A stretch of DNA of 64,000 bases, taken from IMG/VR virus record IMGVR_UViG_3300032516_000001, positions 124,001 to 188,000 of that record. One strand, written 5' to 3'. Position numbers and translations under genes: made by a program. Below, one piece after another: positions 16,435 through 46,078 of this stretch (position 1 is its first letter; each line of letters begins with the position of its first letter). The notes under the pieces are model-generated. The model made no database searches. It was not told where the DNA came from and was given only the letters and a program-made list of their open reading frames with translations.

Positions 16435-17163
16435 TTACGATACTTTCAGCTTCAATACTCCATCCACAACTGAGTGGCTATTGGCTCTTACCCAATCAAA
16501 AAATGCCCCTTCATTTATTTTGTTTTTATTCATGAACGGGCCTAATTTAACCCAAGCAGCATTTTCGACAGCTTTGCTTGCTGGTTCGAATATTTTTGTA
16601 ATAGGATCAAAATCTTTAACACCCATGCTAGAAGCTATTTCGTCCCATCTCTGATCATTGGCCAGACTTTCGAATTTATCGTTTTTATTCTTATTGGTCA
16701 ACACCAGGGTTTTGAACACTGCACCGTTCAAATTGGTGGTGACATCCATGTGTACTTCGGTCAATTCAGGATTAGAGAAATGCATCTCAATGCTAAGTGA
16801 TTCCTCTTGTTTTACATCATTATATTCATACTTGTCTATATTATATCTAATATTATCGACGGTTCCTGTATTAGGAACAAACTGTAATTTTCCACCCATT
16901 TTCTTCAATATTGCGAATTCATCTATGGCTTCATTTAGATCTTTATATTGAATACCATTCATCTTCGGTTTCATTGATGGATCAACATCAACATCGGTAA
17001 CTTCTAATTCATATCCCTTTTCTATTTCTCCTTTGTAATTATTGGTACCCGGAACTTGACGCATAAATGGTGGATATATTCCTTTATCGTTGAAAGCTTT
17101 GTCTATCATGAGCAACGTATCGCTGCGAACAGCTACCCGGGCAGCAATCTGTAGAAAATTCAT
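16435..17163 (-). CDS. Hypothetical protein starting with the IAARVA tag
   Basis: ATG at 17163 gives MNFLQIAARVA. Confidence 0.6.
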   Translation of the reverse strand: MNFLQIAARVAVRSDTLLMIDKAFNDKGIYPPFMRQVPGTNNYKGEIEKGYELEVTDVDVDPSMKPKMNGIQYKDLNEAIDEFAILKKMGGKLQFVPNTGTVDNIRYNIDKYEYNDVKQEESLSIEMHFSNPELTEVHMDVTTNLNGAVFKTLVLTNKNKNDKFESLANDQRWDEIASSMGVKDFDPITKIFEPASKAVENAAWVKLGPFMNKNKINEGAFFDWVRANSHSVVDGVLKLKVS

Positions 17164-17227
17164 AATAATATGATCAAACAAATGGTTTAATACTTCATTT
17201 TATATTACAAATGATGTATTCAAGTGG

Positions 17228-17233
17228 TAAAGT
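17228..17233 (+). promoter_or_regulatory. Extended -10 box (TGG-TAAAGT) 5 nt before ATG; probable leaderless promoter
   Basis: Same geometry as many other genes in the window (see findings). Confidence 0.55.
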
Positions 17234-17238
17234 AAATT

Positions 17239-17709
17239 ATGAACACCAAAAAATGTATCAAATGTGGAAAAACAAAAAGTATAGAAGAATTTGGTCATTT
17301 TAAAGTAAAAAAGAAATATGACTATGTAAGAAAGATATGTACACGGTGCATGTCAAATGCCAGAATTGTATATAATAAAAACCATCGATTTAAACAAACA
17401 TATCAAAATTGTGTTAAATTCAATAAGTTATTTGGAATAAAATGTGATTTCAGTCCGGAATTCGTAGAAAACATAATTAACCAGCCCTGTGCATATTGTG
17501 ATGATAATGAAGTGAAGATTGGACTGGATCGAATTGATAATGATAAACCATACTCAAAACATAACATTGTTCCATGCTGTATTAGATGTAATTATATAAA
17601 AAGGGATATGCCAACCCGAGCATGGAATATGTTGCATCCTGAAATCAAGAAAATAAGAGAACAAGGATTGTTCGGTAGTTGGTGTCCAAGAGGGTTGAAA
17701 TTAACATGA
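17239..17709 (+). CDS. HNH endonuclease-like protein
   Basis: CAYC..IGLDRIDN.K.Y...NIVPCCIRCN.IK; TGG-TAAAGT lies 5 nt before ATG. Confidence 0.75.
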   Translation: MNTKKCIKCGKTKSIEEFGHFKVKKKYDYVRKICTRCMSNARIVYNKNHRFKQTYQNCVKFNKLFGIKCDFSPEFVENIINQPCAYCDDNEVKIGLDRIDNDKPYSKHNIVPCCIRCNYIKRDMPTRAWNMLHPEIKKIREQGLFGSWCPRGLKLT

Positions 17710-18200
17710 GAATTTGTAGAATTTGTAAAGAAGAAAAATTATTAAATGAATTTTATTCACAAATTATGAAGTTGGCCAGTGGGCCGAAAAGAATGTATAG
17801 AACAGAATGCAAAAAATGCACTGATAAAACCTCAAGGAAATATCATCAAAATCATAGGGACAGAATGATATTGGATAATTCGAGAAGGGAAGACAAGAGG
17901 AATAATTTAAAAACAGAAATTACCAGAGAACAAATTTGTGAATTAATAAATAAACCATGTCATTACTGTGGAGAAACGTGCATTCCGATCGGAATCGATA
18001 GAGTCGACAATAATAAGGGCCACACCAATAATAATATTGTTTCATGTTGTATTAGATGCAATTCACTTAAAAGTGATATGCCAACACAAGCATGGATGAA
18101 GTTAGTACCCACTGTTCGAAGAATTCGAGAACTGGGATTCTTCGAACAGTGGGTTGGTCACAATCTGGGATCTAGAAAATTAGGTATCAGACATCGCTAA
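17706..18200 (+). CDS. HNH endonuclease-like protein, tandem paralog of 17239-17709
   Basis: CHYCG..IGIDRVDNNKGH..NIVSCCIRCN.LK; ATGA overlap with the preceding stop. Confidence 0.75.
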   Translation: MRICRICKEEKLLNEFYSQIMKLASGPKRMYRTECKKCTDKTSRKYHQNHRDRMILDNSRREDKRNNLKTEITREQICELINKPCHYCGETCIPIGIDRVDNNKGHTNNNIVSCCIRCNSLKSDMPTQAWMKLVPTVRRIRELGFFEQWVGHNLGSRKLGIRHR

Positions 18201-18218
18201 TACTGAACAAATGTTCAG

Positions 18219-21200
18219 TTATATACGGATCCTTATCTGACTTGTATGAACCACGTACTCTAGGGGAAACACCGGGACATAGATGCACTCAGTTCTCATG
18301 ATCGTCGGATCATCTTCATCAACCGATGCCTTGATGCCGGCGACCTTGGCAACAATCTGCTGTTGAATCAGATTTTGGAACATGCCCAACAAGGCGGTTT
18401 CTGAAGACTTCAGAAGTTGTGGCGTGAACTTCTGCCCGATCATCGGATCGAGGACTTTACGGACCGTCTGTTGAACGAGTTGAATGGTCAAAATGACTGA
18501 CGGAGTCCGGGTGATGACCGAACTCATATTAGTCGTAAGACCATGCCGTACTCGCATCACAGTATCGACTTGCTCGATAACAGTGACACCACTAACAGCA
18601 GTCTGATTTGCTTCAGTCGGGTCAAGAACGCGTCCAAGTTTCTTGAACCCCAAGACTTGGCGACGAGTCAGTGGAACCGCCACGTCCGAAGCCGGATTTG
18701 TCAATATACCAGAAAGAGCTGCCGCCATGTAGGAGGCGTCAACCAACTGGTCAAAGACGTTGCCAAGATCGTCCTGGACGCTCATGACGTATCTATCAGG
18801 ATACGTGACGATCATCATCTCAGACTGGAGTGCAGTTGCGACGGTTCGCGCACCAGTCGGAGTTGTTCCGGCCGCTGTTCCAACGATTCCGATCCGCTCA
18901 CCTTGCTGCCGTGGTGCGCTCATGAAAACGCAATGCTGGTTCAGGTAAGCGAATATGTTTGGATCCGTTCCCAGTGGAACAATAATGTCGGGCTTGACAC
19001 TACCCTCAATCGGTCTCCTCTGTTCATCGATAGCCGCAGTGAACGACCCTACTGCAGCCTGACCGGAACCGGGGGCCTTCAGAACTTGTTTCATTCCAAG
19101 AAGCACTGCACCATTCAGCAAAGCCAAACGGGCTGCGAGCGCGAGCGGGAATTCAGGAGTTGGAGGACCGAAATTCTGCTGAATCTTCTTGAGATCCTGG
19201 AACAGTCCAGTGTCGAGATCCGTCTTTTGGTACTGGTAGCTGATATAATAAACGTCGCCAATTGCTGGTTCAGATCCACCCTTGTTAAAGGTCTGTACTA
19301 AAGCAGTCGAATCGACGTTGATATTCAATGTATTGAATACCGTCAATTCCAGACCTGGGATGCTCTTGGATGGGATCGCAGCGTCAGCCGTCCAAATTGA
19401 ACCCACAATTAACGTAAATTTCCCGGCGGTCGAATAGGTCCCGGCCGAAGCAGGAAGGATCGTGAATCGTAGACCAGTTACTGCATCTGTATAGGTCTGT
19501 CCAGGAACCCCGGTGCCAGATGACCCATTCGGATTGGACGATATGACCGTATACCCAGCCGTAGCAGCTTCACCAGAATCTCCGCTGGTGCCCACCACGA
19601 TTCCAAGACCAGTCTCTGGAATAAACGCAGTGTTAACAACAGCGGTGAATGCTATCGTCGAAGTCGTGCCAGTAGTTAACGAGCACATCTTGACGAATGA
19701 GCCGAGACCAGATACGAGAGCTGGCCAAGCAGCTGCTGCTGCTTTGAAGTTGGTGTCATTATTCAATGCACCGGCAACTGCATCAGCAGTCGGCTGCCAA
19801 CGTCCTACTGAATCACCAGAAGTGAATCCAAGAACGTCGAGAGCCGTGCTAGTGTTATTAATACCGACTAGCGAAGACACCGTATTGGTTCTCGATGTCA
19901 ACACCAATTTATTGATATTGAGACCGAGTCCAGTATGGGCTACGAGCTGCGAAATCGTCAATACTGATGTATTGACAGCATCCGCGATTAGATGGAATGC
20001 CAGACCTGCAATGTGCGCAGTGTACTTATCACGGATTTCAATCGCTAAAACGATAGCTGATTGAAGATCAGTAGCATCAGCTGCCGTTACGATATTTACC
20101 GTGTCAGGTCCAGTGGCAAAGGTGCTATGCCATGCACCACCAGTATTTGAAATGTGTCTATTGTACTTTGTTTTAATATCATTAACTAAAGTGATTAATG
20201 CAGGCAAAGCAGCTGCAGCTGCGGCTGTAACGTCATTGACGTTATCAAGTACGCCGTGGAATACCCCACCAACGCTCGAGTGGTGACCGGCACCAATAGT
20301 GCCATACTTGGTTCTGAGATCATTGGCCAACGCTATCGCATCAGCTAATAATGTCGCTGAATCAGCTGCCGGGCCATTATTGGCGTACGCAGCCTGGACA
20401 TAATCGGCGACTTGGTTCAATGTGATGGCGGGGCCAGCCGGAAGATACAGGCTGTAGTCTGTTCCATCGATATTGATACTGAAGAAATCGGTTACGCCAG
20501 CTTGGATGACGAATGGACCATCCTTAGTACCGACCAACGCCGCTGGATGATTCAGTGCGCTATACTGACCATAGGCAACTTGATTGGGCTGCAAACCAAC
20601 CTTAGCCGCAGCATTAGTCTGTCCAACCGTAGTGGGGGTTAGTACCTTTACATTCGAAGAATAACCATTGGTGGCGGTCTCCGTGTTACGACCAACGATC
20701 TTCAGGATTTCCTGAGTTCCGTAGGTCACAACAGTCGCCGGTACATAGCCACCAATCGGGTTGAATGCCGCAGTACCGTCTGGATGGACTTGGACATCCG
20801 CCCCTACTACAGCATTGATTGCAGCCGCCACTAAAGTCAAGGTGACAATACCCGTCATGGCGATCGGGGCCAGAATGACATCGTCGATTTGAAGGACTAG
20901 ATAGTCCGTCGTGGCGAAGGCCGTTGTTGGACTAACCGGCTGTCCAAGAAGATTGGCCGGGAATCCAGTGGTCATGTTCACCGAGAATGCCGCAGCACCA
21001 TCAACCTTCACACCACCAAACGAACGTGAAGCGGTGTAAAGATCGTATGGCTCAGCTCCCGGAGTCGTGAAACAGGCATGAGTCGCCGGAAGTAACGCCG
21101 AACTAAATTCGATTGTTACAGTTTCGGAAACGGGTGTGCCGCCATAATGGATGGCATCAGGAACAGTCTCTACGCCGGATGGCCACTGCACGATCTGCGG

Positions 21201-22922
21201 AAGAGCCGATTTCGTACCGAATCTAGTCTGGAACAACGGAGCATTGTTGTTCAACTCCGACGTAACGGTGAATTTCCCGATCCCGCTTGGGCCGGGGGTT
21301 ATCACCTTTAGTGTATAGGTATCGTCAACCAATCGGCTATACCAGAAAGTAGCATAGACCTTGGAATCAGCTGTCACCGCATTCTTGAGAGTAATAGTGT
21401 TAGTTGACGAGTCTACTCCCAATACTGCCACAGCAGGCCGTGAATAGGCATCTCGAAAACTGGTACCGACATAGACCGTCACAAGATCCGGCCGATTGGT
21501 CGGAAGATCAATACGGCTGTTGGTGACAGTCTGATAAAGTGACAATCCAAGTGGGGTGTCACGACCATTTCCGGTAGTCGGAGTTAATGGGAGAGTGAAT
21601 TTGGTAGCTGAAGCCGTGTTAGTTATCGGGTCAGTATAACGGGTAGCTTCGACACCGAAAATACGGTCATCAACTAACAGTCCGTAAATTTGTACTGAAT
21701 CGAATGAGACGGTTCCGGTTACCAGACCAGAACTGATCTGGAATGCCGACCCCCAATAGATCTTGGATTGATCACCTTCATTCACGACTGTGAAATCGGG
21801 ACCATTGAGATAATCCCTCCGACCTGGGGCTATACCAACATTCCCCATCGTGATTATGTTGCTATTGGGCAGATAGTCGAAGGTATCTTGCCAAGTATTG
21901 AAATAATATTGGATTGTTATCGTTGCCGTCTCAGCAGGAGCCGATGCTAAAGTAACAGTGCTATTGGCACCATCGACCCCTGATGGGATTACTTGAATCC
22001 CATTAACTAGAACGGTGACCTTTGATGTATCGGTGGTAGTAATTCCACCACCGGATCCATCAACGATAGGTCCATTAAATACGCGGAATGCCCGATTGCG
22101 ATTGGTGTAGTCACCAGGATTGAATCCAAATGCCCCATTGGCATTACCAGATCCAATGAGAATATTTCCATAAGCCATAAGCTGGATGTGATACAGACCC
22201 TGATTGTCAGTATCGACTGCAGCTGTAAGCCCGGCGATGGCCGCTAGATTCACATCATTTGCAATATCAGTAGCCGAACGTGTGCCAGAAGTTAATGTGA
22301 TCGCTACCGGCGCAGTCGAATCATCCAAGTAAACCTGGAGCGTATCACTAGTTCCAGTAACGATTGTATAGGTTTCGGCCTTCGGAGAAATCAGTATTGC
22401 CCGACCAACAGTAATCTGACTAGAAACATTATCCGTGACACGGGTGTCACCACGATGGAAAAAGTAATTAACCGATATCGCATCAGTTGGACTTGGAGGA
22501 ACAAGAAGAGTGATCAGACCATTTGCCCCGTCGACAGCCGCCACGACAACTGGTTCACCATTGACAGTGACAGATACCCTATTCGTTTCATACGTGGTTT
22601 TGCCAATCCCAGTTCCATCCACGATAGGATAATTACGAACCCTTAACTGGAACCGATTCCCATCCTGGAGTCCAATAGTAGGATTGGAGGCTGTGCCACC
22701 AGTGACCCAACGACCAGTTGGATCCTCACCAAATATGGGTGTATCGGCTACGCTGCTCGACCCACGAATCATCTCATAATCGGATTGAGTCAAACTTTCC
22801 TGACCCACCCCAATCAACAGTGGGACCCTGAGACCGTTCAGTAATTGGCCGACAACCGGCTCAATAACAGAGCGAGTGTAAACACCAGGAGGAGCATATG
22901 TAGTGAATGGTCCAATACCCAT
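18219..22922 (-). CDS. Contractile tail sheath protein with large insertion domains
   Basis: N-terminal YAPPGVY; C-terminal sheath signature (VTVIEQ..RVRHGLTT..IQLVQQTVR..IG.K..DPT....YVPVFPLEY); 1567 aa. Confidence 0.92.
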   Translation of the reverse strand: MGIGPFTTYAPPGVYTRSVIEPVVGQLLNGLRVPLLIGVGQESLTQSDYEMIRGSSSVADTPIFGEDPTGRWVTGGTASNPTIGLQDGNRFQLRVRNYPIVDGTGIGKTTYETNRVSVTVNGEPVVVAAVDGANGLITLLVPPSPTDAISVNYFFHRGDTRVTDNVSSQITVGRAILISPKAETYTIVTGTSDTLQVYLDDSTAPVAITLTSGTRSATDIANDVNLAAIAGLTAAVDTDNQGLYHIQLMAYGNILIGSGNANGAFGFNPGDYTNRNRAFRVFNGPIVDGSGGGITTTDTSKVTVLVNGIQVIPSGVDGANSTVTLASAPAETATITIQYYFNTWQDTFDYLPNSNIITMGNVGIAPGRRDYLNGPDFTVVNEGDQSKIYWGSAFQISSGLVTGTVSFDSVQIYGLLVDDRIFGVEATRYTDPITNTASATKFTLPLTPTTGNGRDTPLGLSLYQTVTNSRIDLPTNRPDLVTVYVGTSFRDAYSRPAVAVLGVDSSTNTITLKNAVTADSKVYATFWYSRLVDDTYTLKVITPGPSGIGKFTVTSELNNNAPLFQTRFGTKSALPQIVQWPSGVETVPDAIHYGGTPVSETVTIEFSSALLPATHACFTTPGAEPYDLYTASRSFGGVKVDGAAAFSVNMTTGFPANLLGQPVSPTTAFATTDYLVLQIDDVILAPIAMTGIVTLTLVAAAINAVVGADVQVHPDGTAAFNPIGGYVPATVVTYGTQEILKIVGRNTETATNGYSSNVKVLTPTTVGQTNAAAKVGLQPNQVAYGQYSALNHPAALVGTKDGPFVIQAGVTDFFSINIDGTDYSLYLPAGPAITLNQVADYVQAAYANNGPAADSATLLADAIALANDLRTKYGTIGAGHHSSVGGVFHGVLDNVNDVTAAAAAALPALITLVNDIKTKYNRHISNTGGAWHSTFATGPDTVNIVTAADATDLQSAIVLAIEIRDKYTAHIAGLAFHLIADAVNTSVLTISQLVAHTGLGLNINKLVLTSRTNTVSSLVGINNTSTALDVLGFTSGDSVGRWQPTADAVAGALNNDTNFKAAAAAWPALVSGLGSFVKMCSLTTGTTSTIAFTAVVNTAFIPETGLGIVVGTSGDSGEAATAGYTVISSNPNGSSGTGVPGQTYTDAVTGLRFTILPASAGTYSTAGKFTLIVGSIWTADAAIPSKSIPGLELTVFNTLNINVDSTALVQTFNKGGSEPAIGDVYYISYQYQKTDLDTGLFQDLKKIQQNFGPPTPEFPLALAARLALLNGAVLLGMKQVLKAPGSGQAAVGSFTAAIDEQRRPIEGSVKPDIIVPLGTDPNIFAYLNQHCVFMSAPRQQGERIGIVGTAAGTTPTGARTVATALQSEMMIVTYPDRYVMSVQDDLGNVFDQLVDASYMAAALSGILTNPASDVAVPLTRRQVLGFKKLGRVLDPTEANQTAVSGVTVIEQVDTVMRVRHGLTTNMSSVITRTPSVILTIQLVQQTVRKVLDPMIGQKFTPQLLKSSETALLGMFQNLIQQQIVAKVAGIKASVDEDDPTIMRTECIYVPVFPLEYVVHTSQIRIRI

Positions 22923-23047: not shown

Positions 23048-23064
23048 GAGTTTATCGTATACTA

Positions 23065-24396
23065 TTATTCTTGTGCGGCTTTATCTTTGATCCGCTTAAA
23101 AGTTGTAAGAGCTTTCTCTCTAATTTGCATAGTATTATTATCTGCTGGAACGGGTTTTCCCGTACTAGGATCTATTGACAATGCATGAGTTCCGGCCTGC
23201 CTGCGTATTTTAGCCCTTTCTACTCTATCCGCATCATATGCTTCCCATTTTCGATTGGCAGAACGACCAACAGCAATATCTAATGAAGGATTATCGTGTG
23301 AACCAGTACTCCTTCTAGGAATTGGACCAGATTCACCCATATTGTTAAATTTGAAATTTGTGGCAGAAGGTATCCTAGGTACCAACTTCCCACATTTTTT
23401 ACACGGATGTTTTTCGGAATATTGCTTTATATCATCTGATGAGAGCAACAACTCTTCAAACACTATACGACAGTCATTACATTGATATTCAATGATCGGC
23501 AAGGCCACTTCTCCTAATATACTATACTGATGATTTTTGAAGTTTTTTCTATGCCAATACTTCGACATATTCCGCGCATTCGTACAAATTTTGCACTCGA
23601 GAGAATCATTTCTACCTTTATGTTTATGGCGATAACAATCTGCAATGGGGATCAATCCGTGTTTTTTACATAATTTGTGTGTTTCAGTATAAGAAATAGA
23701 TTTGCTTCGGTAATTCGGATCCTGCCACAATATCTTTGCTGCAATAGAATTACTTATTCGTACTTTCTCACGATATTCCGGATTCTGCCACATCTTCAAA
23801 GTCGCATTGTGCATTTTCTCCTTGATTTCGGGTCGAGCAAAAGTTATCTTCTTGGTAGCTGTTGATTTAGCTATGGATTCCGGACTTGGGGGTTTTCCCA
23901 AACGTGCTTTAGCAATAACAACAGACATCTTTTCCCGGTATTCAGGATCTTGCCATAGTTTTTTCATTTCAGCAGATTTTTGTTCTGATGACATAAATAA
24001 ATAGTCTTTAAAATTGTCTAAGGATCGAGGCAGTGCCTTTTCACGATATTCCGGATTATTCCAGGGATTTTTATTTATATGTGGTTTGTGTTCACCACCC
24101 TTAGCCAAATTAAACCCGAACTGCGGATCTCTTGTATTGAAATGATTGATCCACTTCTCTTCAGCTAAATCGGCTGCTTCTAACGTATCGCAAATTTCTA
24201 GAATTCCATGAGTGAATGCGTCTTTCCCATATTTACGAATAGCATTCCAAAAATGGGCACAACCTCTGCCCCGCTTGTGTTTTGCATTCGCTATATGCTG
24301 ATTCCAACGCTTCATCATCGTTAATTTGGTTAACCCGATGTAACGACGTTGTGAATCAATATGTGTATGCGAATAAATCGTCCAGTGAAGTCCCAT
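23065..24396 (-). CDS. GIY-YIG homing endonuclease fused in frame to an FmdB-like Zn-ribbon protein
   Basis: WTIYSH..RRYIGLT..RWNQH..E GIY-YIG pattern; NUMOD-like repeats (KLWQDPEYREK); C-terminal (M)PIIEYQCNDC..FEEL..CKKCG. Confidence 0.75.
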   Translation of the reverse strand: MGLHWTIYSHTHIDSQRRYIGLTKLTMMKRWNQHIANAKHKRGRGCAHFWNAIRKYGKDAFTHGILEICDTLEAADLAEEKWINHFNTRDPQFGFNLAKGGEHKPHINKNPWNNPEYREKALPRSLDNFKDYLFMSSEQKSAEMKKLWQDPEYREKMSVVIAKARLGKPPSPESIAKSTATKKITFARPEIKEKMHNATLKMWQNPEYREKVRISNSIAAKILWQDPNYRSKSISYTETHKLCKKHGLIPIADCYRHKHKGRNDSLECKICTNARNMSKYWHRKNFKNHQYSILGEVALPIIEYQCNDCRIVFEELLLSSDDIKQYSEKHPCKKCGKLVPRIPSATNFKFNNMGESGPIPRRSTGSHDNPSLDIAVGRSANRKWEAYDADRVERAKIRRQAGTHALSIDPSTGKPVPADNNTMQIREKALTTFKRIKDKAAQE

Positions 24397-30797: not shown

Positions 30798-31178
30798 TTA
30801 CACTTCTTCCGTATCGGTATCTATGTCATCTTCGATAGCAGCTTGGTCATTGACAGCCAATTCCATATTAACAGCTTTGACCCGGGCAACGGTAGATTGT
30901 AAATCGAATTCCTCGGCAACTATCGTCATACCATTCTGTATAGCGGCAATTAGTTCACTCTGTATTTTCTTTTCCAATGCTTCTTTCGCAGCATTACCTT
31001 CAAAGTCAACAGTTATTGATAAGTCGATATGAGCTGAATATTCAGTTCTAGGGGTGGTAAAATCAGCCTTTGGCTTAGAAACACGTTTTGGCTTCTTAGT
31101 ATTCTTGGTATCTTTCTTACGCCTAGCCGCTTCAACACTAACAGAAGCTATGCGTTCAGCCAAAACCTTAAAATCCAT
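30798..31178 (-). CDS. Hypothetical protein starting with the LAERIA tag
   Basis: MDFKVLAERIAS followed by a basic patch. Confidence 0.6.
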   Translation of the reverse strand: MDFKVLAERIASVSVEAARRKKDTKNTKKPKRVSKPKADFTTPRTEYSAHIDLSITVDFEGNAAKEALEKKIQSELIAAIQNGMTIVAEEFDLQSTVARVKAVNMELAVNDQAAIEDDIDTDTEEV

Positions 31179-32814: not shown

Positions 32815-33240
32815 TCAGATAAGTTTTTTGGCTATACGAGCGAGATGATCTTCCCCATGATTAAGAGCGAACGCTATCGCCATGCCATCTTCTCTACGGG
32901 ATTTGGGTAAAACATGATTAATAAATTCATCTGGCGGCTTCACATCGTGTGCTTCAAGATAATGGGCGAATCCTTGAGGCCAAACATAGGTTCCATCAGA
33001 CAGGCAACATGATCCGTTTCTTTGCCCACAGAATCTGCAACTTGACCACCCACGCCATCTAGCTACAACTCTTCCCTCATTTAGGTGCTGTATTATCGCA
33101 TTACGTTCTATCTGATCCCAATTCGGATCAACAAAGTTATGTGGATCAGGTAAATCGGCTTGATGTTTATTGTACCAATAGCCGATAGCTCGCATTCCGC
33201 GAGCCTCGACCGGACTATCAGGGTGTTCGTCTAATATCAT
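32815..33240 (-). CDS. Conserved-type hypothetical metal-binding protein
   Basis: CRFCG..NGS..LSDG.Y.WP.GFAHY...H motif. Confidence 0.6.
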   Translation of the reverse strand: MILDEHPDSPVEARGMRAIGYWYNKHQADLPDPHNFVDPNWDQIERNAIIQHLNEGRVVARWRGWSSCRFCGQRNGSCCLSDGTYVWPQGFAHYLEAHDVKPPDEFINHVLPKSRREDGMAIAFALNHGEDHLARIAKKLI

Positions 33241-36088: not shown

Positions 36089-36117
36089 AAATGACCATAC
36101 ATTCGATATTTAAAAAT

Positions 36118-36321
36118 TTACGACAACATGACCTGTAATACTATGAATTCTTCAATTGAAACAGCCCGCCTCTGGTAACAAAAACTCCCAAGACCAATAT
36201 TATCATAATCTTTGTGATCGTCACAAACTGGTATGCACTTTATCTTGGTATTAACCGGATCGATATAAAATAGTATTACTTGGGTAGCGTCATTCGCACA
36301 TACAGCCATATCACATTTCAT
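36118..36321 (-). CDS. Small Zn-finger protein, EVM-tag family
   Basis: C...VC..VCDDH; ends SIEEFIVLQVMLS. Confidence 0.7.
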   Translation of the reverse strand: MKCDMAVCANDATQVILFYIDPVNTKIKCIPVCDDHKDYDNIGLGSFCYQRRAVSIEEFIVLQVMLS

Positions 36322-36566
36322 TGAGCCATTACCTGCAAAACTTCATATTCATCAAGTGATAAATCCTGTTTGTAGGAAAAGGGCCATGGAATTTGGAAAT
36401 TCCTATGCTCATCGCATACAAAATATTGACCCCAATAAGGGCCAAGAGTCGACTCTTGTCTAAAAAAGATGACCCTTGTGACTTTGCCGTTACATTCTAC
36501 TTTTCTTCCATCCTGTGTCATTGTTGTGCACACAACATGATTTGTGTAAAAATTTATTAACTCCAT
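36318..36566 (-). CDS. Small Zn-finger protein, EVM-tag family
   Basis: VCDEH; ends SLDEYEVLQVMAQ. Confidence 0.7.
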   Translation of the reverse strand: MELINFYTNHVVCTTMTQDGRKVECNGKVTRVIFFRQESTLGPYWGQYFVCDEHRNFQIPWPFSYKQDLSLDEYEVLQVMAQ

Positions 36567-38056: not shown

Positions 38057-38437
38057 TTAAATAATTGAGGATTCAATAAATTCAACAAAATCGTCCATGG
38101 TTGATAATCCAAAGCTATCTATGTCTGAATCGGTAGCTTCATCCAAATCGATAAAATCTATTTTGCCTGAATCCACCAAATCAATCAACTTCCTTATATC
38201 ATCATCACCCTGCATTTCTATAACGCTAGGATCTGATCCCGAGTAAAGTATCTGATCGAGTGTAGGGTCAATTTCAACAGAATTCCTACCATCTGATAAT
38301 TTAACAAAAGTACGTGTAATCGTCTCAGTTTTAACCTTAGACTTGGGCTTAGTAAGTAATATAGCAATTTTCTCAAGATTCATGTTGGCAACTCCGGAAG
38401 TTCGCCTGCATAGGGTGGCAATCTTATTAAGATCCAT
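38057..38437 (-). CDS. Hypothetical protein with a doubled N-terminal L..IA tag
   Basis: MDLNKIA...MNLEKIA; TATATT 5 nt before ATG. Confidence 0.65.
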   Translation of the reverse strand: MDLNKIATLCRRTSGVANMNLEKIAILLTKPKSKVKTETITRTFVKLSDGRNSVEIDPTLDQILYSGSDPSVIEMQGDDDIRKLIDLVDSGKIDFIDLDEATDSDIDSFGLSTMDDFVEFIESSII

Positions 38438-39243: not shown

Positions 39244-40818
39244 CTAAAATCGATAAATATATTTGATCTTAGCCGGAATTGCAATCTTGGTCAAACCAAG
39301 CTTATCAACGTACTCACGTTCTTTTAATTTCAAATTACAAGCCTTATCATAAACAGATTTTTTGTTTATTTCATTTCCATCTTTATCAACGTAAACATAA
39401 CTAGAAGTAGTTTGACCAACTTCTTCCCAATTACTTGCTTTATATATGGTACCAACATGTCCAAATCGTGGATCGGCAAACGAAACAAGACATTTAATTT
39501 CGGGAAAAGCGCTAGACACCTTCTTAATAACTCTAGACATGAGATAAGAAGCAAAATTCTTCTTATGATAACTGGGATCAATACAGAATCTGTCTAATTC
39601 CAAGACTTCGCCATGATTTAAATCAAGTGTATGCGCTATACCTTGTCTAACAGGAGTAGCGAATTTAATAACAGCAACAACTAGTTCTTGAATTTTGGCA
39701 ACAAATATAACTTTAGATGCTCGGCCAAATCCAGCATAATGATACTTATCCAAAAATTCGGTAACATCTGGAGAATGGAGTACTTGGGAAATAACTATAG
39801 AATCAAAAGAAAAATCGATAACATCAATATTTGATCTGTTATGATAACAAACCCCATTTCCAATATACTTACTATAATTACAATTCCAGCACAAAAGCTG
39901 ATATTTTGACATTAACGATGGCTTTTTAACTAATTTTTTGTAAAGATCGATTCCAGATCCTTCACCTATCTTTCTACATGCTGAACCATCATTGTATTTA
40001 TGATCCAAAGTTAACTTATAAAGATCCTTCTCTCCACAACATACGCATTTTCCACCCAATAATGTTAAACAACTCTGTCTGAATTTATCAGTTATTATTC
40101 TACGGCAAGGCAGACATCTATTACTGCCATGAGACAACTGTGATGGGAATTCGTTAACGTCTTTTTCTTTTAAACAAATATTACAAATTTTGGTTATACC
40201 TGATGAAATAACTACTTTTAACTGATGTATTGGGTTAATTCTATATTTCTTATTATTACAATTGTGGCACAATACCTGATAACGTGTTTTATCTGACTCA
40301 CCGTTTAAAATCCTACGTTTCCAACCAAGACTGCCAAAACTACGTTCAGTATTACCATCGTTATTTACATGATCTATTGTCAGAAACTCTTTAATATCTA
40401 AACCGCATGTAACGCATTTTTGACCCAATAAATCAAGAACTTGATTAATAATTGACTGTCTGTACACTCTATGACTTTCAACTACATGTTCAGCGTTATC
40501 ATCAGTCCATTTTTTTATTCTTACCCTAATCTTATCAAGATTTTTCAATCTGTATTCTGATTTATTCTTTAGTATTGCTGCACGATTTTCTTTATAATAT
40601 TCATGTTTATCATTCAAAATTTGATCATGATTATCAGCATACCATTTCTTCCTGATAACTTTTAACTTTTCACTATTTTCTATTTCATATATTTTATTAT
40701 GTTTCTTTCTACATTCCTTACACTTTGAGTCTTTCCCGTTTTTCTTAATTGTGTTATTAAAATACTCAGAAAGCAATTTTTCAACACCACATTTAACACA
40801 AATTTGTGTTGCATCCAT
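39244..40818 (-). CDS. Double-HNH endonuclease fused to a C-terminal Mom-like (GNAT) domain
   Basis: C..CG..LTIDHVNNDG..CHNCN and C.CCG..LTLDH.YNDG..CWNCN; then LDKYHY..KFATPVR..EVLELDRFCI..SFADP..GH.GTIYKASNW. Confidence 0.78.
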   Translation of the reverse strand: MDATQICVKCGVEKLLSEYFNNTIKKNGKDSKCKECRKKHNKIYEIENSEKLKVIRKKWYADNHDQILNDKHEYYKENRAAILKNKSEYRLKNLDKIRVRIKKWTDDNAEHVVESHRVYRQSIINQVLDLLGQKCVTCGLDIKEFLTIDHVNNDGNTERSFGSLGWKRRILNGESDKTRYQVLCHNCNNKKYRINPIHQLKVVISSGITKICNICLKEKDVNEFPSQLSHGSNRCLPCRRIITDKFRQSCLTLLGGKCVCCGEKDLYKLTLDHKYNDGSACRKIGEGSGIDLYKKLVKKPSLMSKYQLLCWNCNYSKYIGNGVCYHNRSNIDVIDFSFDSIVISQVLHSPDVTEFLDKYHYAGFGRASKVIFVAKIQELVVAVIKFATPVRQGIAHTLDLNHGEVLELDRFCIDPSYHKKNFASYLMSRVIKKVSSAFPEIKCLVSFADPRFGHVGTIYKASNWEEVGQTTSSYVYVDKDGNEINKKSVYDKACNLKLKEREYVDKLGLTKIAIPAKIKYIYRF

Positions 40819-40823
40819 GTGTA

Positions 40824-41135: not shown

Positions 41136-42407
41136 TTAAACATTTACAGCCAAGAAATTTCGAACACGATCATCTAAAATTTGAAGATCATCCTTAAGTT
41201 CATGCTCCCATACAGTCAGACACTTTAGTCCAACCTCATTCCACTGATTGATAATCTTTCGCGCATGAACCTTGTTGCTTTCGCCAGTTTTATCTTTCCC
41301 GTGCCAATAATCACCAAGAATTTCAACGACATGAGTCACGCGTTTGAAAGATGGAGACCCGTCTTGTTTCGGATAAACAGGAAAACAAAAATCCGGATTT
41401 CGATTGTTCTGAACGGATGGAATAAGCTTCCAGAAACTCCCATTGCCAGAGAAACAAAAGAATGGGTATAACTTATTAAATGCCAACTCGGGCTTATTCG
41501 GACCAGCACGACGCGAATGCTCCAAATGCTTACGCGCATACTCCGGGTTCATCATCGGATGAGGCACACCATATTTCTTCATACATGTAGATCGGTACGA
41601 TTCTTCATTATGGGTCAAACTGTAAATCAAACGATTACTCTCAATGGACATAAATCGTCTTAGTGATTCATTCATCGATGATTTGGTCTTAGAGTCCTGA
41701 GTAGTCCACTCAACCCCGTAACGCACCAGATTAGTTTGTTTGATTTTTTCTTGGACTTCTGGCGCTTGCGCTGGGTCCGGTACACCGAATTGGGCGATAT
41801 TGGTTTGACGCCCCTTCTCACGAATTTCTGGAACTCGTAACGTTTGTTCATCACCATAACGCTCGAGATTGGTGGCGAGTTGTTTGGCCCTGATCTCAGG
41901 AACTTGAGACGGATTCTCTACACCGTATTTCTCAAGGTTTGTTTGACGAATCTTTTCCTTTATTTCGGGACGCGCAAAATTGTCCTTCGGGAGATGTGCG
42001 GTTCTATCTTTCCCGTCCCAATGTGATTGGACCTGTTTGTATAGAGTGGACTTCTTACAGAACACATTCTCGGCGCCATAACGTTCCGTTATTGTGGCCG
42101 CTTTCTTCTCAGCAGCACCCGGCACCATCAAAGCGTTTGTAACATCGTCCCCGTATTTCTTCTGGAATGTTGATTTGATCCGTTCAAGAGCAACGGCATT
42201 CTTATCTCTTGACTGCCAAGCCTGACAGTCTTTCCTATGGCGTTTCATCTGAGTCAGAGATGTGCTTTTATGACCGCAGAGACACGCTAACGGTTTTCTA
42301 TCTGGATTTGCTGCTAAAAACTCAGGGCACTTACGTTTATGTCCCGAAGTTACCGGCCTATCAAATTCTTTTCCACAGAATTCGCAATGAAAACTCACAA
42401 TCATCAT
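41136..42407 (-). CDS. Homing-endonuclease-like protein with KYGV..P repeats and a C-terminal Vsr/PD-(D/E)XK-like nuclease
   Basis: About 7 repeats of the (K/R)YG.EN..Q.PEI type; NPDF..VEILGDYWHG..CLTVWEHE. Confidence 0.75.
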   Translation of the reverse strand: MMIVSFHCEFCGKEFDRPVTSGHKRKCPEFLAANPDRKPLACLCGHKSTSLTQMKRHRKDCQAWQSRDKNAVALERIKSTFQKKYGDDVTNALMVPGAAEKKAATITERYGAENVFCKKSTLYKQVQSHWDGKDRTAHLPKDNFARPEIKEKIRQTNLEKYGVENPSQVPEIRAKQLATNLERYGDEQTLRVPEIREKGRQTNIAQFGVPDPAQAPEVQEKIKQTNLVRYGVEWTTQDSKTKSSMNESLRRFMSIESNRLIYSLTHNEESYRSTCMKKYGVPHPMMNPEYARKHLEHSRRAGPNKPELAFNKLYPFFCFSGNGSFWKLIPSVQNNRNPDFCFPVYPKQDGSPSFKRVTHVVEILGDYWHGKDKTGESNKVHARKIINQWNEVGLKCLTVWEHELKDDLQILDDRVRNFLAVNV

Positions 42408-42469: not shown

Positions 42470-43360
42470 CTAAATTCCCAAGAACCTTCTGGGTGTTAAT
42501 GCTCCACGCCCGACCGAAGGTCCGAATGACGACCTTATACCTATCCCATAACGTGACTGTTTCAAACCGCGTATTATTTTAACAGTTTCTTTTGCAGCAG
42601 TAACCATTGAATCAAACCGGGACTGTGCGTCTGATGCCAGAGATTGATATTTAGAAGATTTTTCAATAGATAGAGACACACCCCCTATGTTATAGTCGAA
42701 TTCATCCACGACCCAGTTAAGAGCCAATGCATTCACTGCATATATAGTAGCTCCAACCAGGCACAACGATCTCCAATTCCTATGCTGTGTAATTAACTGG
42801 TCTAAACTGGCATAGAACGTTTGCGGAGGATACATATTTAGTGCATCGTTTGATATGCGCAAGAATTCCAATAATTCCTCATCTTCCCAAATAAATCCAA
42901 ATACTCTATTATACTGATTAATCGTAGTTTCTCCCGCAGGTGGCGTGAAATGATAGTTGCGATCAGGATTGTTATCTCGTAACATTATTCTAAGACCATG
43001 AACTAAATCATATTCAATGGGTGTAAAATCAGTACAAGTTGTAACTGTTGGTTCAACAACATTAAATTCTTGTAATACTTCAACGAATTGACTATTTAGA
43101 TACTGTCTGAAATGCCATCGGATTCTATAGGGTCCGATATTAGCATCTGCCGGAATTATGAATGATGCATAATATTCCCCGATCGATGGATTTATTGGGA
43201 TACGATTTGCTGGCGATAACAACACTTCCACGCCAGTTGTATAATCGTATATGTCATATGAGACTTCAGCAGCATTTACTGGATTGCCACCTTTAGCTTT
43301 TAAGTATAAAGCAAGATCCCCACGGCAAAGCTCTTGACACCTCTTATATGCACAGCCCAT
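42470..43360 (-). CDS. Probable neck / head-tail adaptor protein
   Basis: Ig-like N-terminal half; WEDEELLEFL..ALNMYPP..YQSLA pattern of adaptor proteins; ATG 43360 lies 5 nt after TATTGT. Confidence 0.55.
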   Translation of the reverse strand: MGCAYKRCQELCRGDLALYLKAKGGNPVNAAEVSYDIYDYTTGVEVLLSPANRIPINPSIGEYYASFIIPADANIGPYRIRWHFRQYLNSQFVEVLQEFNVVEPTVTTCTDFTPIEYDLVHGLRIMLRDNNPDRNYHFTPPAGETTINQYNRVFGFIWEDEELLEFLRISNDALNMYPPQTFYASLDQLITQHRNWRSLCLVGATIYAVNALALNWVVDEFDYNIGGVSLSIEKSSKYQSLASDAQSRFDSMVTAAKETVKIIRGLKQSRYGIGIRSSFGPSVGRGALTPRRFLGI

Positions 43361-43393
43361 ATAACACAATACATATTAATTGGCTATCACCGC

Positions 43394-44614
43394 CTAAATA
43401 ATCTGCATCTTCTGCTTGGCGAAGAACGGCGAGTCAAAAAGATCACGGACGTCTTCGTCTTTTGATAATTCAGCTAAAACTTCCGAAGGAGTTGAAGTAT
43501 TCCCCGCGACAAACCTTTTGACTACAGCATCTTTATCTTTCGCCAATTCGGCTAAAACTTCTGGAGGAGTTGAAGTATTCCCAGCAACACCAGATCTTAT
43601 ACTAGAATCTTCATTCTTTGCTAATTTAACTAAGGCTTCCACTGGAGTATCTGGATCGTAAATAATTTGGTATAGAACGTCATGATCAATTATATCTGTT
43701 AATTGGGGCATTAGATGCCCATACACATCATAAAATTCTTTCCGACCTTCCATGAATAATCCTTCTGTCGTTGCAAAATTCATTTCACGAAATACTTTAA
43801 GTACTTCATTATCATCTAGTTCACCTGATGTCATTCTGGTTAAAGGAGATTTCGGATAAGATTTGGTTATGGACTTAATTTTTGGCATTATCCCTGAAAA
43901 ATCTCTGCCGGTATACTTTTCCACTGTAGATTCTTCTATGTCATTGTCTTTAGCATCATAATACTCAATCTCATTTGGTTCATTATTTTCATCTCTTTGT
44001 ATCGAAATTGCTATTTTATATAATGAATTCTGCTCTTCGGGACTAAGTGTTTGATTTATATTCTTAGTTAGTATAAAGAAGAATACTACGTTATTCATAT
44101 CATAATCATCAAAATATGCTGCATCTTTCATACTGATGCACCACTTAGTACCAAGCCCGTAATGAGCCGCAGCTTCTTTATTCTTAACTTGTATCACTCT
44201 AAACTTTTCCGAATCATATACTTCTTCATAATCGCATTTATCAGATAATTTATATCTTTCTTCTACTTTTTCCTTTCTTTTGCCCTGTTTGTCTCTTATC
44301 TCGAACAATTTATCACGTAATTCGGTGAAATCCGTTGGTTCATACTGATTTATGTCTTTCTTCTCTAATTGTCTACCATGTTTATGGAATAGATCGGTAA
44401 CGTCAGCAATCTCTCGAGCGAGAGCCTGTTTAGATTGAAGAATTTTCATTTGCCAATCAATATATTTCAAAGAATGAGATGGGTCTCTAGAAATGAAATA
44501 CTCCACGTCCTTCTCATATTTTGGGTATTTCTTTAGTATCTCTTCTTTCCTTCCAGCTATACGTATAGCAATATTCGTAAGAACTATGTTAAATGCAATC
44601 CGGCGAAGATCCAT
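43394..44614 (-). CDS. Protein with IA.RIA tag, YG.GTKWC domain and leucine-rich-variant (LRV) repeats
   Basis: MDLRRIA..IAIRIA; AAAHYGLGTKWCIS; three TP.EVL..LAKD....VAGN.ST repeats. Confidence 0.7.
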   Translation of the reverse strand: MDLRRIAFNIVLTNIAIRIAGRKEEILKKYPKYEKDVEYFISRDPSHSLKYIDWQMKILQSKQALAREIADVTDLFHKHGRQLEKKDINQYEPTDFTELRDKLFEIRDKQGKRKEKVEERYKLSDKCDYEEVYDSEKFRVIQVKNKEAAAHYGLGTKWCISMKDAAYFDDYDMNNVVFFFILTKNINQTLSPEEQNSLYKIAISIQRDENNEPNEIEYYDAKDNDIEESTVEKYTGRDFSGIMPKIKSITKSYPKSPLTRMTSGELDDNEVLKVFREMNFATTEGLFMEGRKEFYDVYGHLMPQLTDIIDHDVLYQIIYDPDTPVEALVKLAKNEDSSIRSGVAGNTSTPPEVLAELAKDKDAVVKRFVAGNTSTPSEVLAELSKDEDVRDLFDSPFFAKQKMQII

Positions 44615-44642
44615 CTTAACCTCTAATTAATCAGCGTCCAAT

Positions 44643-44882
44643 ATGAGTCTAAAATGTAAAGTGGGTAAAATGAATAAATCAAGAAAATATCACAGAGATT
44701 CAGATTATCCTTTAGACAGGATCGAAGACAAGGATGATTGCCAATCCTATTCGAAATGCCTGAATGAAGCCGCTAAGAATACTAAAATTCTGAATCTACC
44801 ATGTATAGGTTGCGTCAACTATATAAAGATCGGATCGCAATTAGATGCTTGGAGAAAACGCCAAGACGGATATACGTGGTAA
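44643..44882 (+). CDS. Small Cys-rich hypothetical protein
   Basis: C..YSKCL..AA..PC.GC motif. Confidence 0.55.
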   Translation: MSLKCKVGKMNKSRKYHRDSDYPLDRIEDKDDCQSYSKCLNEAAKNTKILNLPCIGCVNYIKIGSQLDAWRKRQDGYTW

Positions 44883-45118
44883 AAGCTCATTTCTATAAAG
44901 ACATCAAATTTTATGAAGAAGGAGACCAACTCTGTTGGCTTTGTAGATCCAGTACTGCTTCGACGTATCTTCTCGTAGAGAACCATCTCTTGAAAATGGC
45001 AGAAATCTTCAAAATTTGTTCGAGGTGTGTACCTGCAATTTATTTCACTACCCTTGGTAGCATTCGCATTGAATTATCTAAAGATGAAGTAGAAGTATAC
45101 AAAATCATGGAAACATGA
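44876..45118 (+). CDS. Small Zn-finger protein, EVM-tag family
   Basis: CWLC..ICSRC; ends SKDEVEVYKIMET; GTG start at 44876. Confidence 0.7.
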   Translation: MVKAHFYKDIKFYEEGDQLCWLCRSSTASTYLLVENHLLKMAEIFKICSRCVPAIYFTTLGSIRIELSKDEVEVYKIMET

Positions 45119-45119
45119 T

Positions 45120-45447
45120 ATGCGATCCACTGAATTTGCTCGCTATCTACGCGCTTGGTTTCGTGACAAGAAGCATAATTTCCGTGCAGCAAATTTTGGG
45201 ATTACTGCAGCGAAGTGTACTAAATGTGGTCTAGTAGTTACTATTCGTGGACGAATTTTTAGTTCAACTCATACCTGGCTTCCCAACGATATCCGAAAAT
45301 TTGTTAATTTTAAGGCGAAACCGGGTTCCAAATTGTATCGAGTGTCACATTATCCCAAAAAAATTTTCTCCATCCCAACTTCATGAGATACTACAACCCA
45401 TACCGGATTGCGGCGTTGTAATTGTTTATGCAATCACAGAATCTTGA
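45120..45447 (+). pseudogene. Possibly frameshifted Zn-finger/EVM-tag gene (ORFs 45120-45386 and 45247-45447)
   Basis: KCTKCG is in one frame and the tag-like end DCGVVIVYAITES is in the +1 frame; an A7 run (CCCAAAAAAATTTT) lies in the overlap. Confidence 0.35.
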
Positions 45448-46078
45448 ATATGATTGCTGCCACGCGTTTAGCTATGGCTGCCAAATTCACGCTCATTCTA
45501 GAATACGTAATTCCAGTCAAATTATCCGCAATTTCTTCCATGGCATCCAGATCTTTATGTTTAGCAGCACTGGCTAAGCCGCCCATAAAGTCTTTTAAAG
45601 CAGCAGTGTCTAATATCTCATCGACACCAGGAGTTTTAGATATCTGGATCCCAAGATTTACAATAGATGAAACTAAAGAGGCATCACCGGTCTGTTCAAT
45701 TAAATCTGTAGCATTTAATATAGAATTCTTGAGAGCCATGATGGCCCCCTTGGAATTTCTGTTACTTATATTATTTCTTATTGAAGTTAAATTCTGTTCT
45801 ACCAACGTCCCGGGATCATAACCACTCTTGCGCTTCTTGCCCTTCTTCTTACCCTTTCCTTTCCCCTTCATGTGCTTGAAAGCTTCGACTTGCTGTAATC
45901 TTTTGCTCGCTTCTTCTTTAGTATCATAGCAGCCCCCATTCCAATCAGGGGATTTTTTTGACTTAACGCAATATTTACCATCTTCTTTCTTTATATATGC
46001 TAAGCGAGTACTTGTTTCAATAGCCAATTCGGATATCCTGGCAGCTATAGATGCATTCCTGAATACATAATTATCCAT
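45434..46078 (-). CDS. Hypothetical, probably head-associated protein
   Basis: SIAARIS near the N-terminus and IAKRVAA at the C-terminus; KEDGKYCVKS..GCYDTKEEA.KRLQQVE.FKH motif common in phage head-related proteins. Confidence 0.6.
   Translation of the reverse strand: MDNYVFRNASIAARISELAIETSTRLAYIKKEDGKYCVKSKKSPDWNGGCYDTKEEASKRLQQVEAFKHMKGKGKGKKKGKKRKSGYDPGTLVEQNLTSIRNNISNRNSKGAIMALKNSILNATDLIEQTGDASLVSSIVNLGIQISKTPGVDEILDTAALKDFMGGLASAAKHKDLDAMEEIADNLTGITYSRMSVNLAAIAKRVAAIIFKIL

What the first reader, a model, noticed from the sequence alone, without database searches (positions are those of the whole stretch)
16435..46078. Shared terminal IAxR(I/V)A peptide on unrelated proteins: candidate capsid-targeting signal
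Seen: MNFLQIAARVA (17163), MDFKVLAERIA (31178), MDLRRIA..NIAIRIA (44614), MDLNKIA..MNLEKIA (38437), SIAARIS plus C-terminal LAAIAKRVAA (46078), and, just outside this span, C-terminal LRRIAARII (11639). The rest of these proteins is unrelated. Established: T4 internal head proteins share a ~10-aa N-terminal capsid-targeting sequence removed by the prohead protease. Inference: these are packaged or ejected head proteins of this phage, marked by an amphipathic tag.
Basis: partly seen in the sequence, partly recalled or inferred. Interest (0 to 1): 0.62.

Follow-up and report, generated by a model that had tools for sequence, protein, structure and literature searches.

The report
Shared terminal tag in huge phages
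A roughly 12-residue amphipathic peptide starts (or sometimes ends) 10 to 20 otherwise unrelated proteins in this sediment huge phage and its relatives; it is most likely a sorting signal that loads accessory enzymes into the phage head, but that destination is inferred, not shown.

Summary
The window lies in a 241.6-kb record (about 57% complete) of an uncultured huge phage from sediment. The consensus M-(D/N)-(F/L)-x-(R/K)-I-A-x-R-(I/V)-A occurs at protein termini far above chance: 6 N-terminal matches against 0.017 expected, and 6 strict core matches against 0.16. Two copies are identical as peptides but differ at 6 synonymous codon positions. Apart from the tag, the carrier proteins share no detectable similarity.

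The same tag heads other proteins in at least eight related records. All those tested carry a major capsid protein 89-94% identical to this phage's. Complete relatives of 377-427 kb have 15-23 core sites each, against 0-1 in a reversed-pattern control.

Three observations point to the head. Tagged genes cluster directly downstream of the capsid gene, as a tandem array of six or seven in one relative. Orthologues keep the tag. Carriers include an ADP-ribosyltransferase, a ferritin-like protein, a NIF phosphatase and a SinI-like nuclease.

Capsid loading is therefore the best reading (about 0.5). Virion presence, the receptor and proteolytic removal remain untested; one complex prediction gave no answer.

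The parts
17128..17163 (-). N-terminal tag (residues 1-12) of the 242-aa protein 16435-17163. The true start is the ATG at 17163. The body gives a marginal SinI-type restriction endonuclease match.
   Evidence: matrix score 24.0. Pfam PF09570, 23.3 bits against a cut-off of 22. Orthologues in another sample and in G009 keep the tag.
31143..31178 (-). N-terminal tag of the 126-aa protein 30798-31178, followed by a lysine-rich linker and an acidic tail.
   Evidence: score 19.5. The G009 orthologue (38% identity) keeps the tag but lacks the linker.
44552..44614 (-). Two tag copies in tandem (residues 1-21) at the start of the 406-aa LRV-repeat protein 43394-44614.
   Evidence: Close homologues in G001-G003 carry the same motif. 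Distant homologues carry a different N-terminal helix at the place of the second copy.
46028..46057 (-). Tag near the N-terminus (residues 8-17) of the 214-aa protein 45434-46078.
   Evidence: score 19.5. The G001 homologue has an N-terminal tag.
45437..45487 (-). C-terminal tag of the same 214-aa protein.
   Evidence: score 22.1.
11642..11677 (-). C-terminal tag of the 105-aa protein 11639-11956, preceded by an acidic linker.
   Evidence: score 22.2. In G009 the homologous domain sits in a 554-aa protein with the tag at residue 305.
38363..38437 (-). Two half-motifs, M-(D/N)-L-x-K-I-A only, at two in-frame ATGs of the protein 38057-38437. A weak, partial case.
   Evidence: Below the matrix threshold.
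13547..13594 (-). Possible degenerate N-terminal tag on the 171-aa protein 13079-13594. Seen by eye only.
   Evidence: N-terminus listed. Not supported by the matrix scan.
32818..32847 (-). Possible degenerate C-terminal tag (L-A-R-I-A) on the 141-aa protein 32815-33240. Seen by eye only.
   Evidence: C-terminus listed. Not supported by the matrix scan.
42470..43360 (-). Context: head-tail connector-like gene directly downstream of the tagged 406-aa gene.
   Evidence: blastp against the annotated protein of Tunturiibacter phage Tunturi_5, E 5e-41.
18219..22922 (-). Context: 1567-aa tail sheath gene, about 1 kb upstream (in the direction of transcription) of the tagged gene 16435-17163, with + strand ORFs 17239-18200 between them.
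   Evidence: blastp against the Tunturi_5 tail sheath, E 2e-51.

Best explanation
The peptide M-(D/N)-(F/L)-x-(R/K)-I-A-x-R-(I/V)-A is a short amphipathic helix used as a portable address label.

Shown: it is appended, usually at the extreme N-terminus and sometimes at the C-terminus, to many unrelated accessory proteins of one clade of 240-430 kb phages. Where the following sequence is low-complexity, a charged linker often comes after it.

Inferred: the helix docks onto a conserved component of the assembling head, either the scaffold core or the inner face of the HK97-fold shell. These proteins would then be enclosed in the prohead and delivered with the DNA at the next infection. This is the logic of the T4 capsid-targeting sequence and of encapsulin cargo-loading peptides.

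Unknown: whether the label is cut off afterwards.
For: 1. Non-random and terminal. In 39 of 47 distinct N-terminal instances the Met lies exactly 5 residues before I-A. The helical hydrophobic moment is 0.61 against 0.38 for shuffles.
2. Selection acts on the peptide, not the DNA. Two identical 11-residue tags differ at 6 synonymous codons. Orthologues at 38-53% identity keep the tag.
3. The tag is specific to one clade and goes with one capsid.
   - A degenerate DNA scan of IMG/VR recovers tagged ORF starts mostly on huge-phage contigs.
   - All five contigs tested have a major capsid protein 89-94% identical to this one.
   - Core sites against reversed control: 15 vs 1, 16 vs 0, 23 vs 0 and 17 vs 0, and 7 vs 0 in this record.
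   - Three unrelated huge phages have 0-1.
4. Head-gene linkage.
   - In this record the tagged and hairpin genes at genome 225.9-231.6 kb follow the capsid gene (234460-235356).
   - In G007 six or seven tagged small acidic genes with overlapping stops and starts begin 400 nt after the capsid gene.
   - In G009 the gene right after the capsid gene is tagged.
   - Window copies lie next to connector, sheath and minor-tail genes.
5. Carrier types.
   - ART-PolyVal ADP-ribosyltransferase (37.7 bits) and a ferritin-like protein (43.9 bits) in G009.
   - NIF phosphatase in G001.
   - SinI-like nuclease here.
   - T4 packages the ADP-ribosyltransferase Alt through its targeting sequence (PMC7411985). 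Ferritin-like proteins are classic encapsulin cargo (my own knowledge).
6. The prohead protease ends in a conserved tail, F-(F/L)-x-W-K-G-(R/K)-I-A-S, in six clade members. This resembles the second half of the tag. The HK97 protease is encapsidated through its C-terminus (Duda et al. 2013, as cited in PMC7411985).
Against: - No proteomic or structural evidence places any carrier in a virion.
- The receptor is not identified.
- No consistent cleavage motif follows the tags.
- A few sites are internal: the SWIM protein at residues 59-66, with conserved sequence upstream, and G009 proteins at residues 67 and 305.
- Three carriers in this record lie among small non-structural genes (genome 203-646, 9197-9520, 43309-43614).
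- Three more distant clade members, with capsid protein 87-91% identical, showed no canonical tags in the 20 kb around their head genes. That is unexpected if the nearly invariant capsid protein itself is the receptor.
- The protease tail resembles the tag only partly.
Confidence: 0.5

Rival explanations
1. The helix docks the carriers onto some other common hub, not the head. Candidates are a phage replication or transcription assembly, the phage's volactin-type actin filament, the AAA ATPase of the structural module, or a host complex such as RNA polymerase that the enzymes modify.
For: Carriers are enzymes typical of host takeover: an ADP-ribosyltransferase, a phosphatase, kinase-like proteins and a nuclease. 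The phage encodes an actin-like protein (PF25216, E 1e-65) and a classical AAA ATPase. Actin-family filaments and AAA unfoldases are known to recognise short terminal helices (my own knowledge). Some tagged genes lie outside structural clusters.
Against: Repeated placement of tagged genes directly after the capsid gene, on the same strand and partly with overlapping stop and start codons, fits late co-expression with head proteins. No candidate hub was tested. Strict co-occurrence with one capsid lineage is equally expected from shared ancestry, so it does not discriminate.
Confidence: 0.22
2. The helix anchors a varied set of decoration proteins on the outside of the capsid. They are capsid-bound but neither packaged nor ejected.
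For: An array of small acidic proteins sits right after the capsid gene. Decoration genes often sit there, and decoration proteins commonly bind through a terminal segment (my own knowledge). The capsid protein is extremely conserved.
Against: An ADP-ribosyltransferase, nuclease, phosphatase and ferritin-like protein have no obvious use on the outer surface. The lysine-rich DNA-binding-like linkers in window genes 30798-31178 and 45434-46078 suit the interior.
Confidence: 0.1
3. The peptide is a generic membrane-binding amphipathic helix that brings the proteins to the host inner membrane.
For: It has a clear helical hydrophobic moment. It is used at either terminus, as with MinD- or FtsA-type membrane-targeting helices (my own knowledge).
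Against: Ala at two positions and Arg at one position are invariant in 47 instances. That points to a specific protein interface. Membrane helices tolerate wide sequence variation and favour bulky hydrophobic and lysine residues.
Confidence: 0.06
4. There is no sorting function. The similarity reflects chance, hidden paralogy, or a conserved DNA or RNA element around start codons.
For: The patterns were defined after seeing the data. The four-to-five-member hairpin family is truly paralogous over 40 residues.
Against: Enrichment is 35- to 350-fold. The motif is replicated in other genomes with controls. Identical peptides have synonymous differences and upstream DNA is unrelated. There is no similarity beyond the tag.
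Confidence: 0.02

Closest known systems
T4 capsid-targeting sequence of internal proteins IPI-III and Alt (Mullaney and Black 1996; PMC3012670, PMC7411985)
   Same: A short N-terminal peptide shared by otherwise diverse proteins. The cargo includes an ADP-ribosyltransferase. Cargo genes are hypervariable.
   Different: The sequence is unrelated. Here the tag also works from C-termini and occurs in tandem copies. There are 15-23 carriers per genome rather than about four. Cleavage by the prohead protease and binding to the scaffold core are not shown. The phage is not T4-like (298-aa HK97-type capsid protein).
Encapsulin cargo-loading peptides (my own knowledge)
   Same: A short conserved terminal peptide on unrelated cargo enzymes. 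The shell has the HK97 fold. Cargo genes are often adjacent to the shell gene. One carrier is a ferritin-like protein.
   Different: Encapsulin peptides are mostly C-terminal and Gly/Ser/Leu-rich, with a different consensus. Here the shell is a DNA-filled virus head with portal, protease and tail. Binding to the shell is untested.
P1 DarB N-terminal packaging signal (PMC9024508)
   Same: An N-terminal signal of 30 residues or fewer that suffices to bring a protein into a myovirus head. The cargo is an anti-restriction enzyme.
   Different: According to that paper, P1 shows no consensus shared among its Dar proteins. Here the consensus is sharp and shared by many proteins.
C-terminal encapsidation tail of the HK97 maturation protease (Duda et al. 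2013, cited in PMC7411985)
   Same: A terminal peptide directs a protein into the prohead. This clade's protease has a conserved C-terminal tail that partly resembles the tag.
   Different: In HK97 the tail belongs to a single protein, not a family-wide label. The resemblance here covers only the R-I-A-S half.
Encapsulation peptides of bacterial microcompartments (my own knowledge)
   Same: An amphipathic helix of about 10-18 residues at either terminus, joined by a poorly conserved linker, on unrelated enzymes.
   Different: No microcompartment shell genes were seen. The shell fold and the biology are different.
Polyvalent proteins of phages and conjugative elements (Pfam PF18760 name; Iyer et al. 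2017, my own knowledge)
   Same: The effector domains are of the same kind (ADP-ribosyltransferase, nucleases) and are thought to be delivered with the DNA.
   Different: There the domains are fused into one giant protein. Here each domain is a separate small protein with its own tag.

Membership tests
T4-type capsid-targeting sequence | Short N-terminal peptide shared by otherwise unrelated proteins of one phage | tested here: met
   Some copies are C-terminal or internal.
T4-type capsid-targeting sequence | Peptide removed by the prohead protease at a consensus site | tested here: inconclusive
   A protease gene is present. No common motif follows the tags. A Glu within 10 residues is expected by chance in about 40% of cases.
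T4-type capsid-targeting sequence | Carriers present in proheads and virions and ejected with the DNA | not testable with these tools
   No isolate and no proteome. Only DNA runs from sediment hold the sequence.
T4-type capsid-targeting sequence | Peptide sufficient to package a foreign protein | not testable with these tools
   Needs an experiment.
T4-type capsid-targeting sequence | Sequence homology to the T4 peptide, and a T4-like head gene set | tested here: not met
   The capsid protein is a 298-aa HK97-type protein, 45% identical to that of Tunturi_5. No Pfam or PHROG match to T4 head families.
Encapsulin cargo-loading system | Conserved terminal peptide on diverse cargo, with cargo genes next to an HK97-fold shell gene | tested here: met
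   Some sources name relatives of the capsid protein 'HK97-fold major capsid protein'.
Encapsulin cargo-loading system | Peptide binds the inner face of the shell protein | tested here: inconclusive
   The single complex prediction gave no answer.
Encapsulin cargo-loading system | Shell is a DNA-free nanocompartment without portal, protease or tail | tested here: not met
   Protease, sheath, connector and tail genes are present.
Bacterial microcompartment encapsulation peptide | BMC-domain shell proteins encoded alongside | not tested
   None of the roughly 70 proteins scanned matched a BMC family. The whole record was not scanned.

The most novel reading that the evidence does not exclude
This clade of huge phages runs a general, encapsulin-like cargo-loading system. 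Any protein bearing the 12-residue label is enclosed in the HK97-fold head, giving each phage 15-23 interchangeable packaged effectors, among them an ADP-ribosyltransferase, phosphatase, nuclease, ferritin-like protein and small acidic proteins. The label would then be a ready-made handle for loading foreign proteins. It would also be a living link between phage heads and encapsulins.
Probability: 0.4. Interest if true: 0.8.

Novelty: new variant of a known kind. Interest (0 to 1): 0.7.

Why it matters
If the label is a head-loading signal, a simple sequence rule predicts the packaged protein set of a very widespread group of uncultured huge phages. The group is large: 1697 capsid homologues at E below 1e-5, and the top 120 clusters are 83-100% identical to this phage's capsid protein. 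The rule would show how such phages pre-arm themselves with many exchangeable enzymes. It would extend peptide-directed cargo loading from T4, P1 and encapsulins to a new lineage with far more cargo. It would also give a short portable tag for protein delivery experiments. Even if the destination proves different, a sharply conserved terminal address label on dozens of unrelated phage proteins is a clear, testable handle on the cell biology of huge phages.

Tried and rejected
- Complex prediction of the capsid protein (74-row alignment) with residues 1-36 of the protein 16435-17163 returned 'no answer' (ipSAE 0.01). It is neither support nor evidence against binding.
- AlphaFold2 of the protein 16435-17163 failed (mean pLDDT 38), so the nuclease fold and the tag-linker architecture could not be checked structurally.
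- AlphaFold2 of the 62-aa hairpin-plus-tag protein gave three helices (pLDDT 76). Foldseek against PDB gave nothing below E = 1.
- An exact back-translated pattern for the canonical 11-mer found nothing in IMG/VR. A looser pattern was needed.
- PHROGs and Pfam leave most carriers and all head proteins unannotated. Head genes were identified only through blastp against the annotated phage Tunturi_5.
- The Atlas search for the hairpin family gave no lead.
- A k-mer search of upstream regions found a T-A-G-A-C element about 40 nt before three tagged window genes, but also before untagged genes, so no promoter class could be assigned. The promoter and terminator scan between the capsid gene and the tag array in G007 was at chance level.
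- By eye, genome 229040-229864 looked ParB-like. No profile match supported this, so it is not claimed.
- No RNA runs hold the sequence.
- Records behind loci L088-L090 are not held, so they could not be scanned whole.
Full report
WHAT THE WINDOW IS. The window is bases 124001-188000 of a single 241,648-bp viral record with 42% G+C. CheckV rates the record 57% complete. Identical proteins occur on a 323-kb contig. Four sediment metagenome runs hold the DNA and no RNA run does. No near relative exists among deposited phages. The nearest cultured phage is the 309-kb myovirus Tunturiibacter phage Tunturi_5. Using its annotation, blastp identifies several genes:
- In the window: tail sheath (18219-22922), tail-terminator-like (24442-25653), minor-tail-like (29130-30455), a virion protein (8965-9654) and a head-tail connector-like protein (42470-43360).
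- Outside the window: the major capsid protein (genome 234460-235356, 298 aa, 45% identical) and the head maturation protease.

THE OBSERVATION. A six-frame regular-expression scan of the whole record shows the motif is not confined to the window.
- A second protein (genome 225884-226219) starts with the same 11 residues as the window protein 16435-17163.
- Further copies lie at genome 229864, 229501, 219037, 9197 and at the C-terminus of 203-646.
- A 40-residue helical hairpin module whose first helix resembles the tag heads four paralogues; a fifth carries it internally.

Against residue shuffles of the predicted proteome, the strict core is enriched about 38-fold and the N-terminal pattern about 350-fold. 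A position matrix separates 11 strong sites from background. The two identical tags differ at six synonymous codon positions and have unrelated upstream DNA. What is conserved is therefore the peptide, not a nucleotide element. All-against-all BLAST of the carriers finds nothing in common beyond the tag or the hairpin.

REPLICATION IN OTHER GENOMES. Homologues of the tagged 406-aa protein led to three related contigs, G001-G003. In these the same motif heads or ends other proteins. The capsid protein of G001 is 93% identical.

A degenerate DNA pattern for the N-terminal tag was scanned across IMG/VR. It returned 43 matches. About half look like chance or are internal. The rest are ORF starts, concentrated on huge-phage contigs. 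All five contigs tested encode a capsid protein 89-94% identical to this one, and three of them are complete genomes of 377-427 kb with terminal repeats.

Counts of the core pattern against a reversed-pattern control:

| Record | Core sites | Control |
|---|---|---|
| This record (G000) | 7 | 0 |
| G001 | 7 | 1 |
| G002 (35 kb) | 5 | 0 |
| G007 | 15 | 1 |
| G008 | 16 | 0 |
| G009 | 23 | 0 |
| G010 | 17 | 0 |
| Three unrelated huge phages | 0-1 | 0 |
| Tunturi_5 | 4 | 2 |

In G009, inspection of all 23 sites gives about 15 at N-termini, 2 at C-termini, 2 internal, and the remainder in unlikely frames.

From 47 distinct N-terminal instances the consensus is Met, Asn/Asp, Leu/Phe, x, Arg/Lys, Ile, Ala, Ser/Ala, Arg, Ile/Val, Ala, Ala/Ser. 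The Met lies exactly five residues before Ile-Ala in 39 of the 47. The helical hydrophobic moment is well above that of shuffled versions. One ORF in G010 carries the I-A-S-R unit six times in a row.

WHAT POINTS TO THE HEAD.
- Gene position in this record. The gene order is protease, a 439-aa acidic scaffold-like protein, a 225-aa protein, then the capsid protein. The tagged and hairpin genes at 225.9-231.6 kb follow on the same strand.
- Gene position in relatives. In G007 the capsid gene is followed after 400 nt by six or seven small acidic genes, each starting with the tag. Most have overlapping stop and start codons, and they share nothing else. In G009 the next gene after the capsid gene is tagged.
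- Gene position in the window. Tagged genes sit beside connector, sheath and minor-tail genes.
- Conservation. Orthologues in G001 and G009 at 38-53% identity retain the tag while linkers and bodies change.
- Carrier type. Where a profile matches, the carrier is an enzyme or a DNA-associated type:
  - an ART-PolyVal ADP-ribosyltransferase and a ferritin-like protein in G009;
  - a NIF-type phosphatase in G001;
  - two weak kinase-like matches;
  - a marginal SinI-type nuclease and an LRV-repeat protein in the window;
  - a SWIM-finger protein.
- Charged runs. Several carriers have long lysine-rich or acidic runs.

T4 packages Alt, an ADP-ribosyltransferase, and its internal proteins through an N-terminal targeting sequence that binds the prohead core (PMC7411985, PMC3012670). 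P1 packages DarB through its first 30 residues (PMC9024508).

The protease is split by two inteins in this record but is intact in G001. In six clade members it ends in a conserved tail that resembles the second half of the tag. This recalls the C-terminal encapsidation tail of the HK97 protease.

WHAT REMAINS OPEN. Nothing here shows that any carrier is in a virion.
- Structure predictions were uninformative.
- No shared cleavage motif follows the tags.
- Some sites are internal, and the upstream sequence is conserved between orthologues.
- A few carriers lie among non-structural small genes.
- In the 20 kb around the head genes of three more distant clade members, canonical tags were not seen.

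I therefore hold head loading as the best single explanation at about one half. A different common docking hub comes second. An outer decoration anchor and a membrane helix trail behind, and chance or paralogy is effectively excluded.

COMPARISON AND NOVELTY. The tag works like the T4 targeting sequence and like encapsulin and microcompartment cargo peptides, but it is not a member of any of these families. The sequence is unrelated. The head genes are not T4-like. The shell is a virus head. The tag is used at both termini, in tandem copies, and on many more proteins. I found no paper describing it. I class it as a new variant of a known kind of system.

Noticed in passing
window 34808-36521 and 44996-45118; genome 4918-5178, 14900-15566, 24799-26818, 59463-60423, 82197-82394: There is a second shared terminal peptide. 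Of 245 predicted proteins, 22 end in (V/I/L)-M-x-x-stop, usually after an acidic stretch, against 1.0 expected from shuffles. Most are small proteins of 50-140 aa. The same ending appears in distant clade members L088 and L089. I did not test whether these are one paralogous family or a second address label.
   Followed up: partly
genome 237647-241648 (beyond the window; locus L080): The head maturation protease gene is interrupted by two inteins, one carrying a LAGLIDADG endonuclease. The G001 orthologue is intact at 503 aa. The record ends inside this gene.
   Followed up: partly
genome 234460-235356 (locus L080:6460-7356): The 298-aa major capsid protein is extraordinarily conserved. There are 1697 homologues at E below 1e-5, and the best 120 clusters are 83-100% identical, on contigs up to 399 kb. 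Neighbouring head proteins are only about 45% identical between the same genomes.
   Followed up: partly
window 26039-27046 (-): This is an actin-like protein of the volactin family (PF25216, E 1e-65), encoded inside the structural gene cluster.
   Followed up: no
window 13637-15124 (-): This is a classical AAA ATPase (PF00004, E 1.5e-20), encoded downstream of the sheath gene among virion genes.
   Followed up: no
window 31485-32801 (-): This is an adenylosuccinate lyase homologue (PF00206, E 1e-49), next to the tagged gene 30798-31178.
   Followed up: no
genome 43309-43614, 223599-223865, 226228-226416, 229914-230318, 231167-231604: This family shares a 40-residue helix-loop-helix module whose first helix resembles the tag. 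In four members it is N-terminal; in 223599-223865 it is internal. The 62-aa member also ends in a tag. Downstream of 229914-230318, a 26-codon out-of-frame remnant encodes the same C-terminal tag, which suggests a frameshifted copy.
   Followed up: partly
window 7125-8921, 23065-24396, 39244-40818, 41136-42404: There are many homing endonuclease genes (HNH and GIY-YIG, some fused to Mom-like domains). They include several near-identical GIY-YIG N-termini elsewhere in the record.
   Followed up: no
genome 199684-211566; window 12025-12597: There is a 3960-aa collagen-like repeat protein and a 190-aa collagen-like protein. Their repeats dominate codon statistics.
   Followed up: no
window 38480, 44652, 46123 (about 40 nt upstream of the ATGs at 38437, 44614, 46078): A shared T-A-G-A-C element lies 38-45 nt before three tagged genes. 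It is also found before several untagged genes and may be a promoter element.
   Followed up: partly
locus L128:3791-3822 (G010): This ORF starts with the tag, and its I-A-S-R unit is repeated six times in tandem.
   Followed up: no
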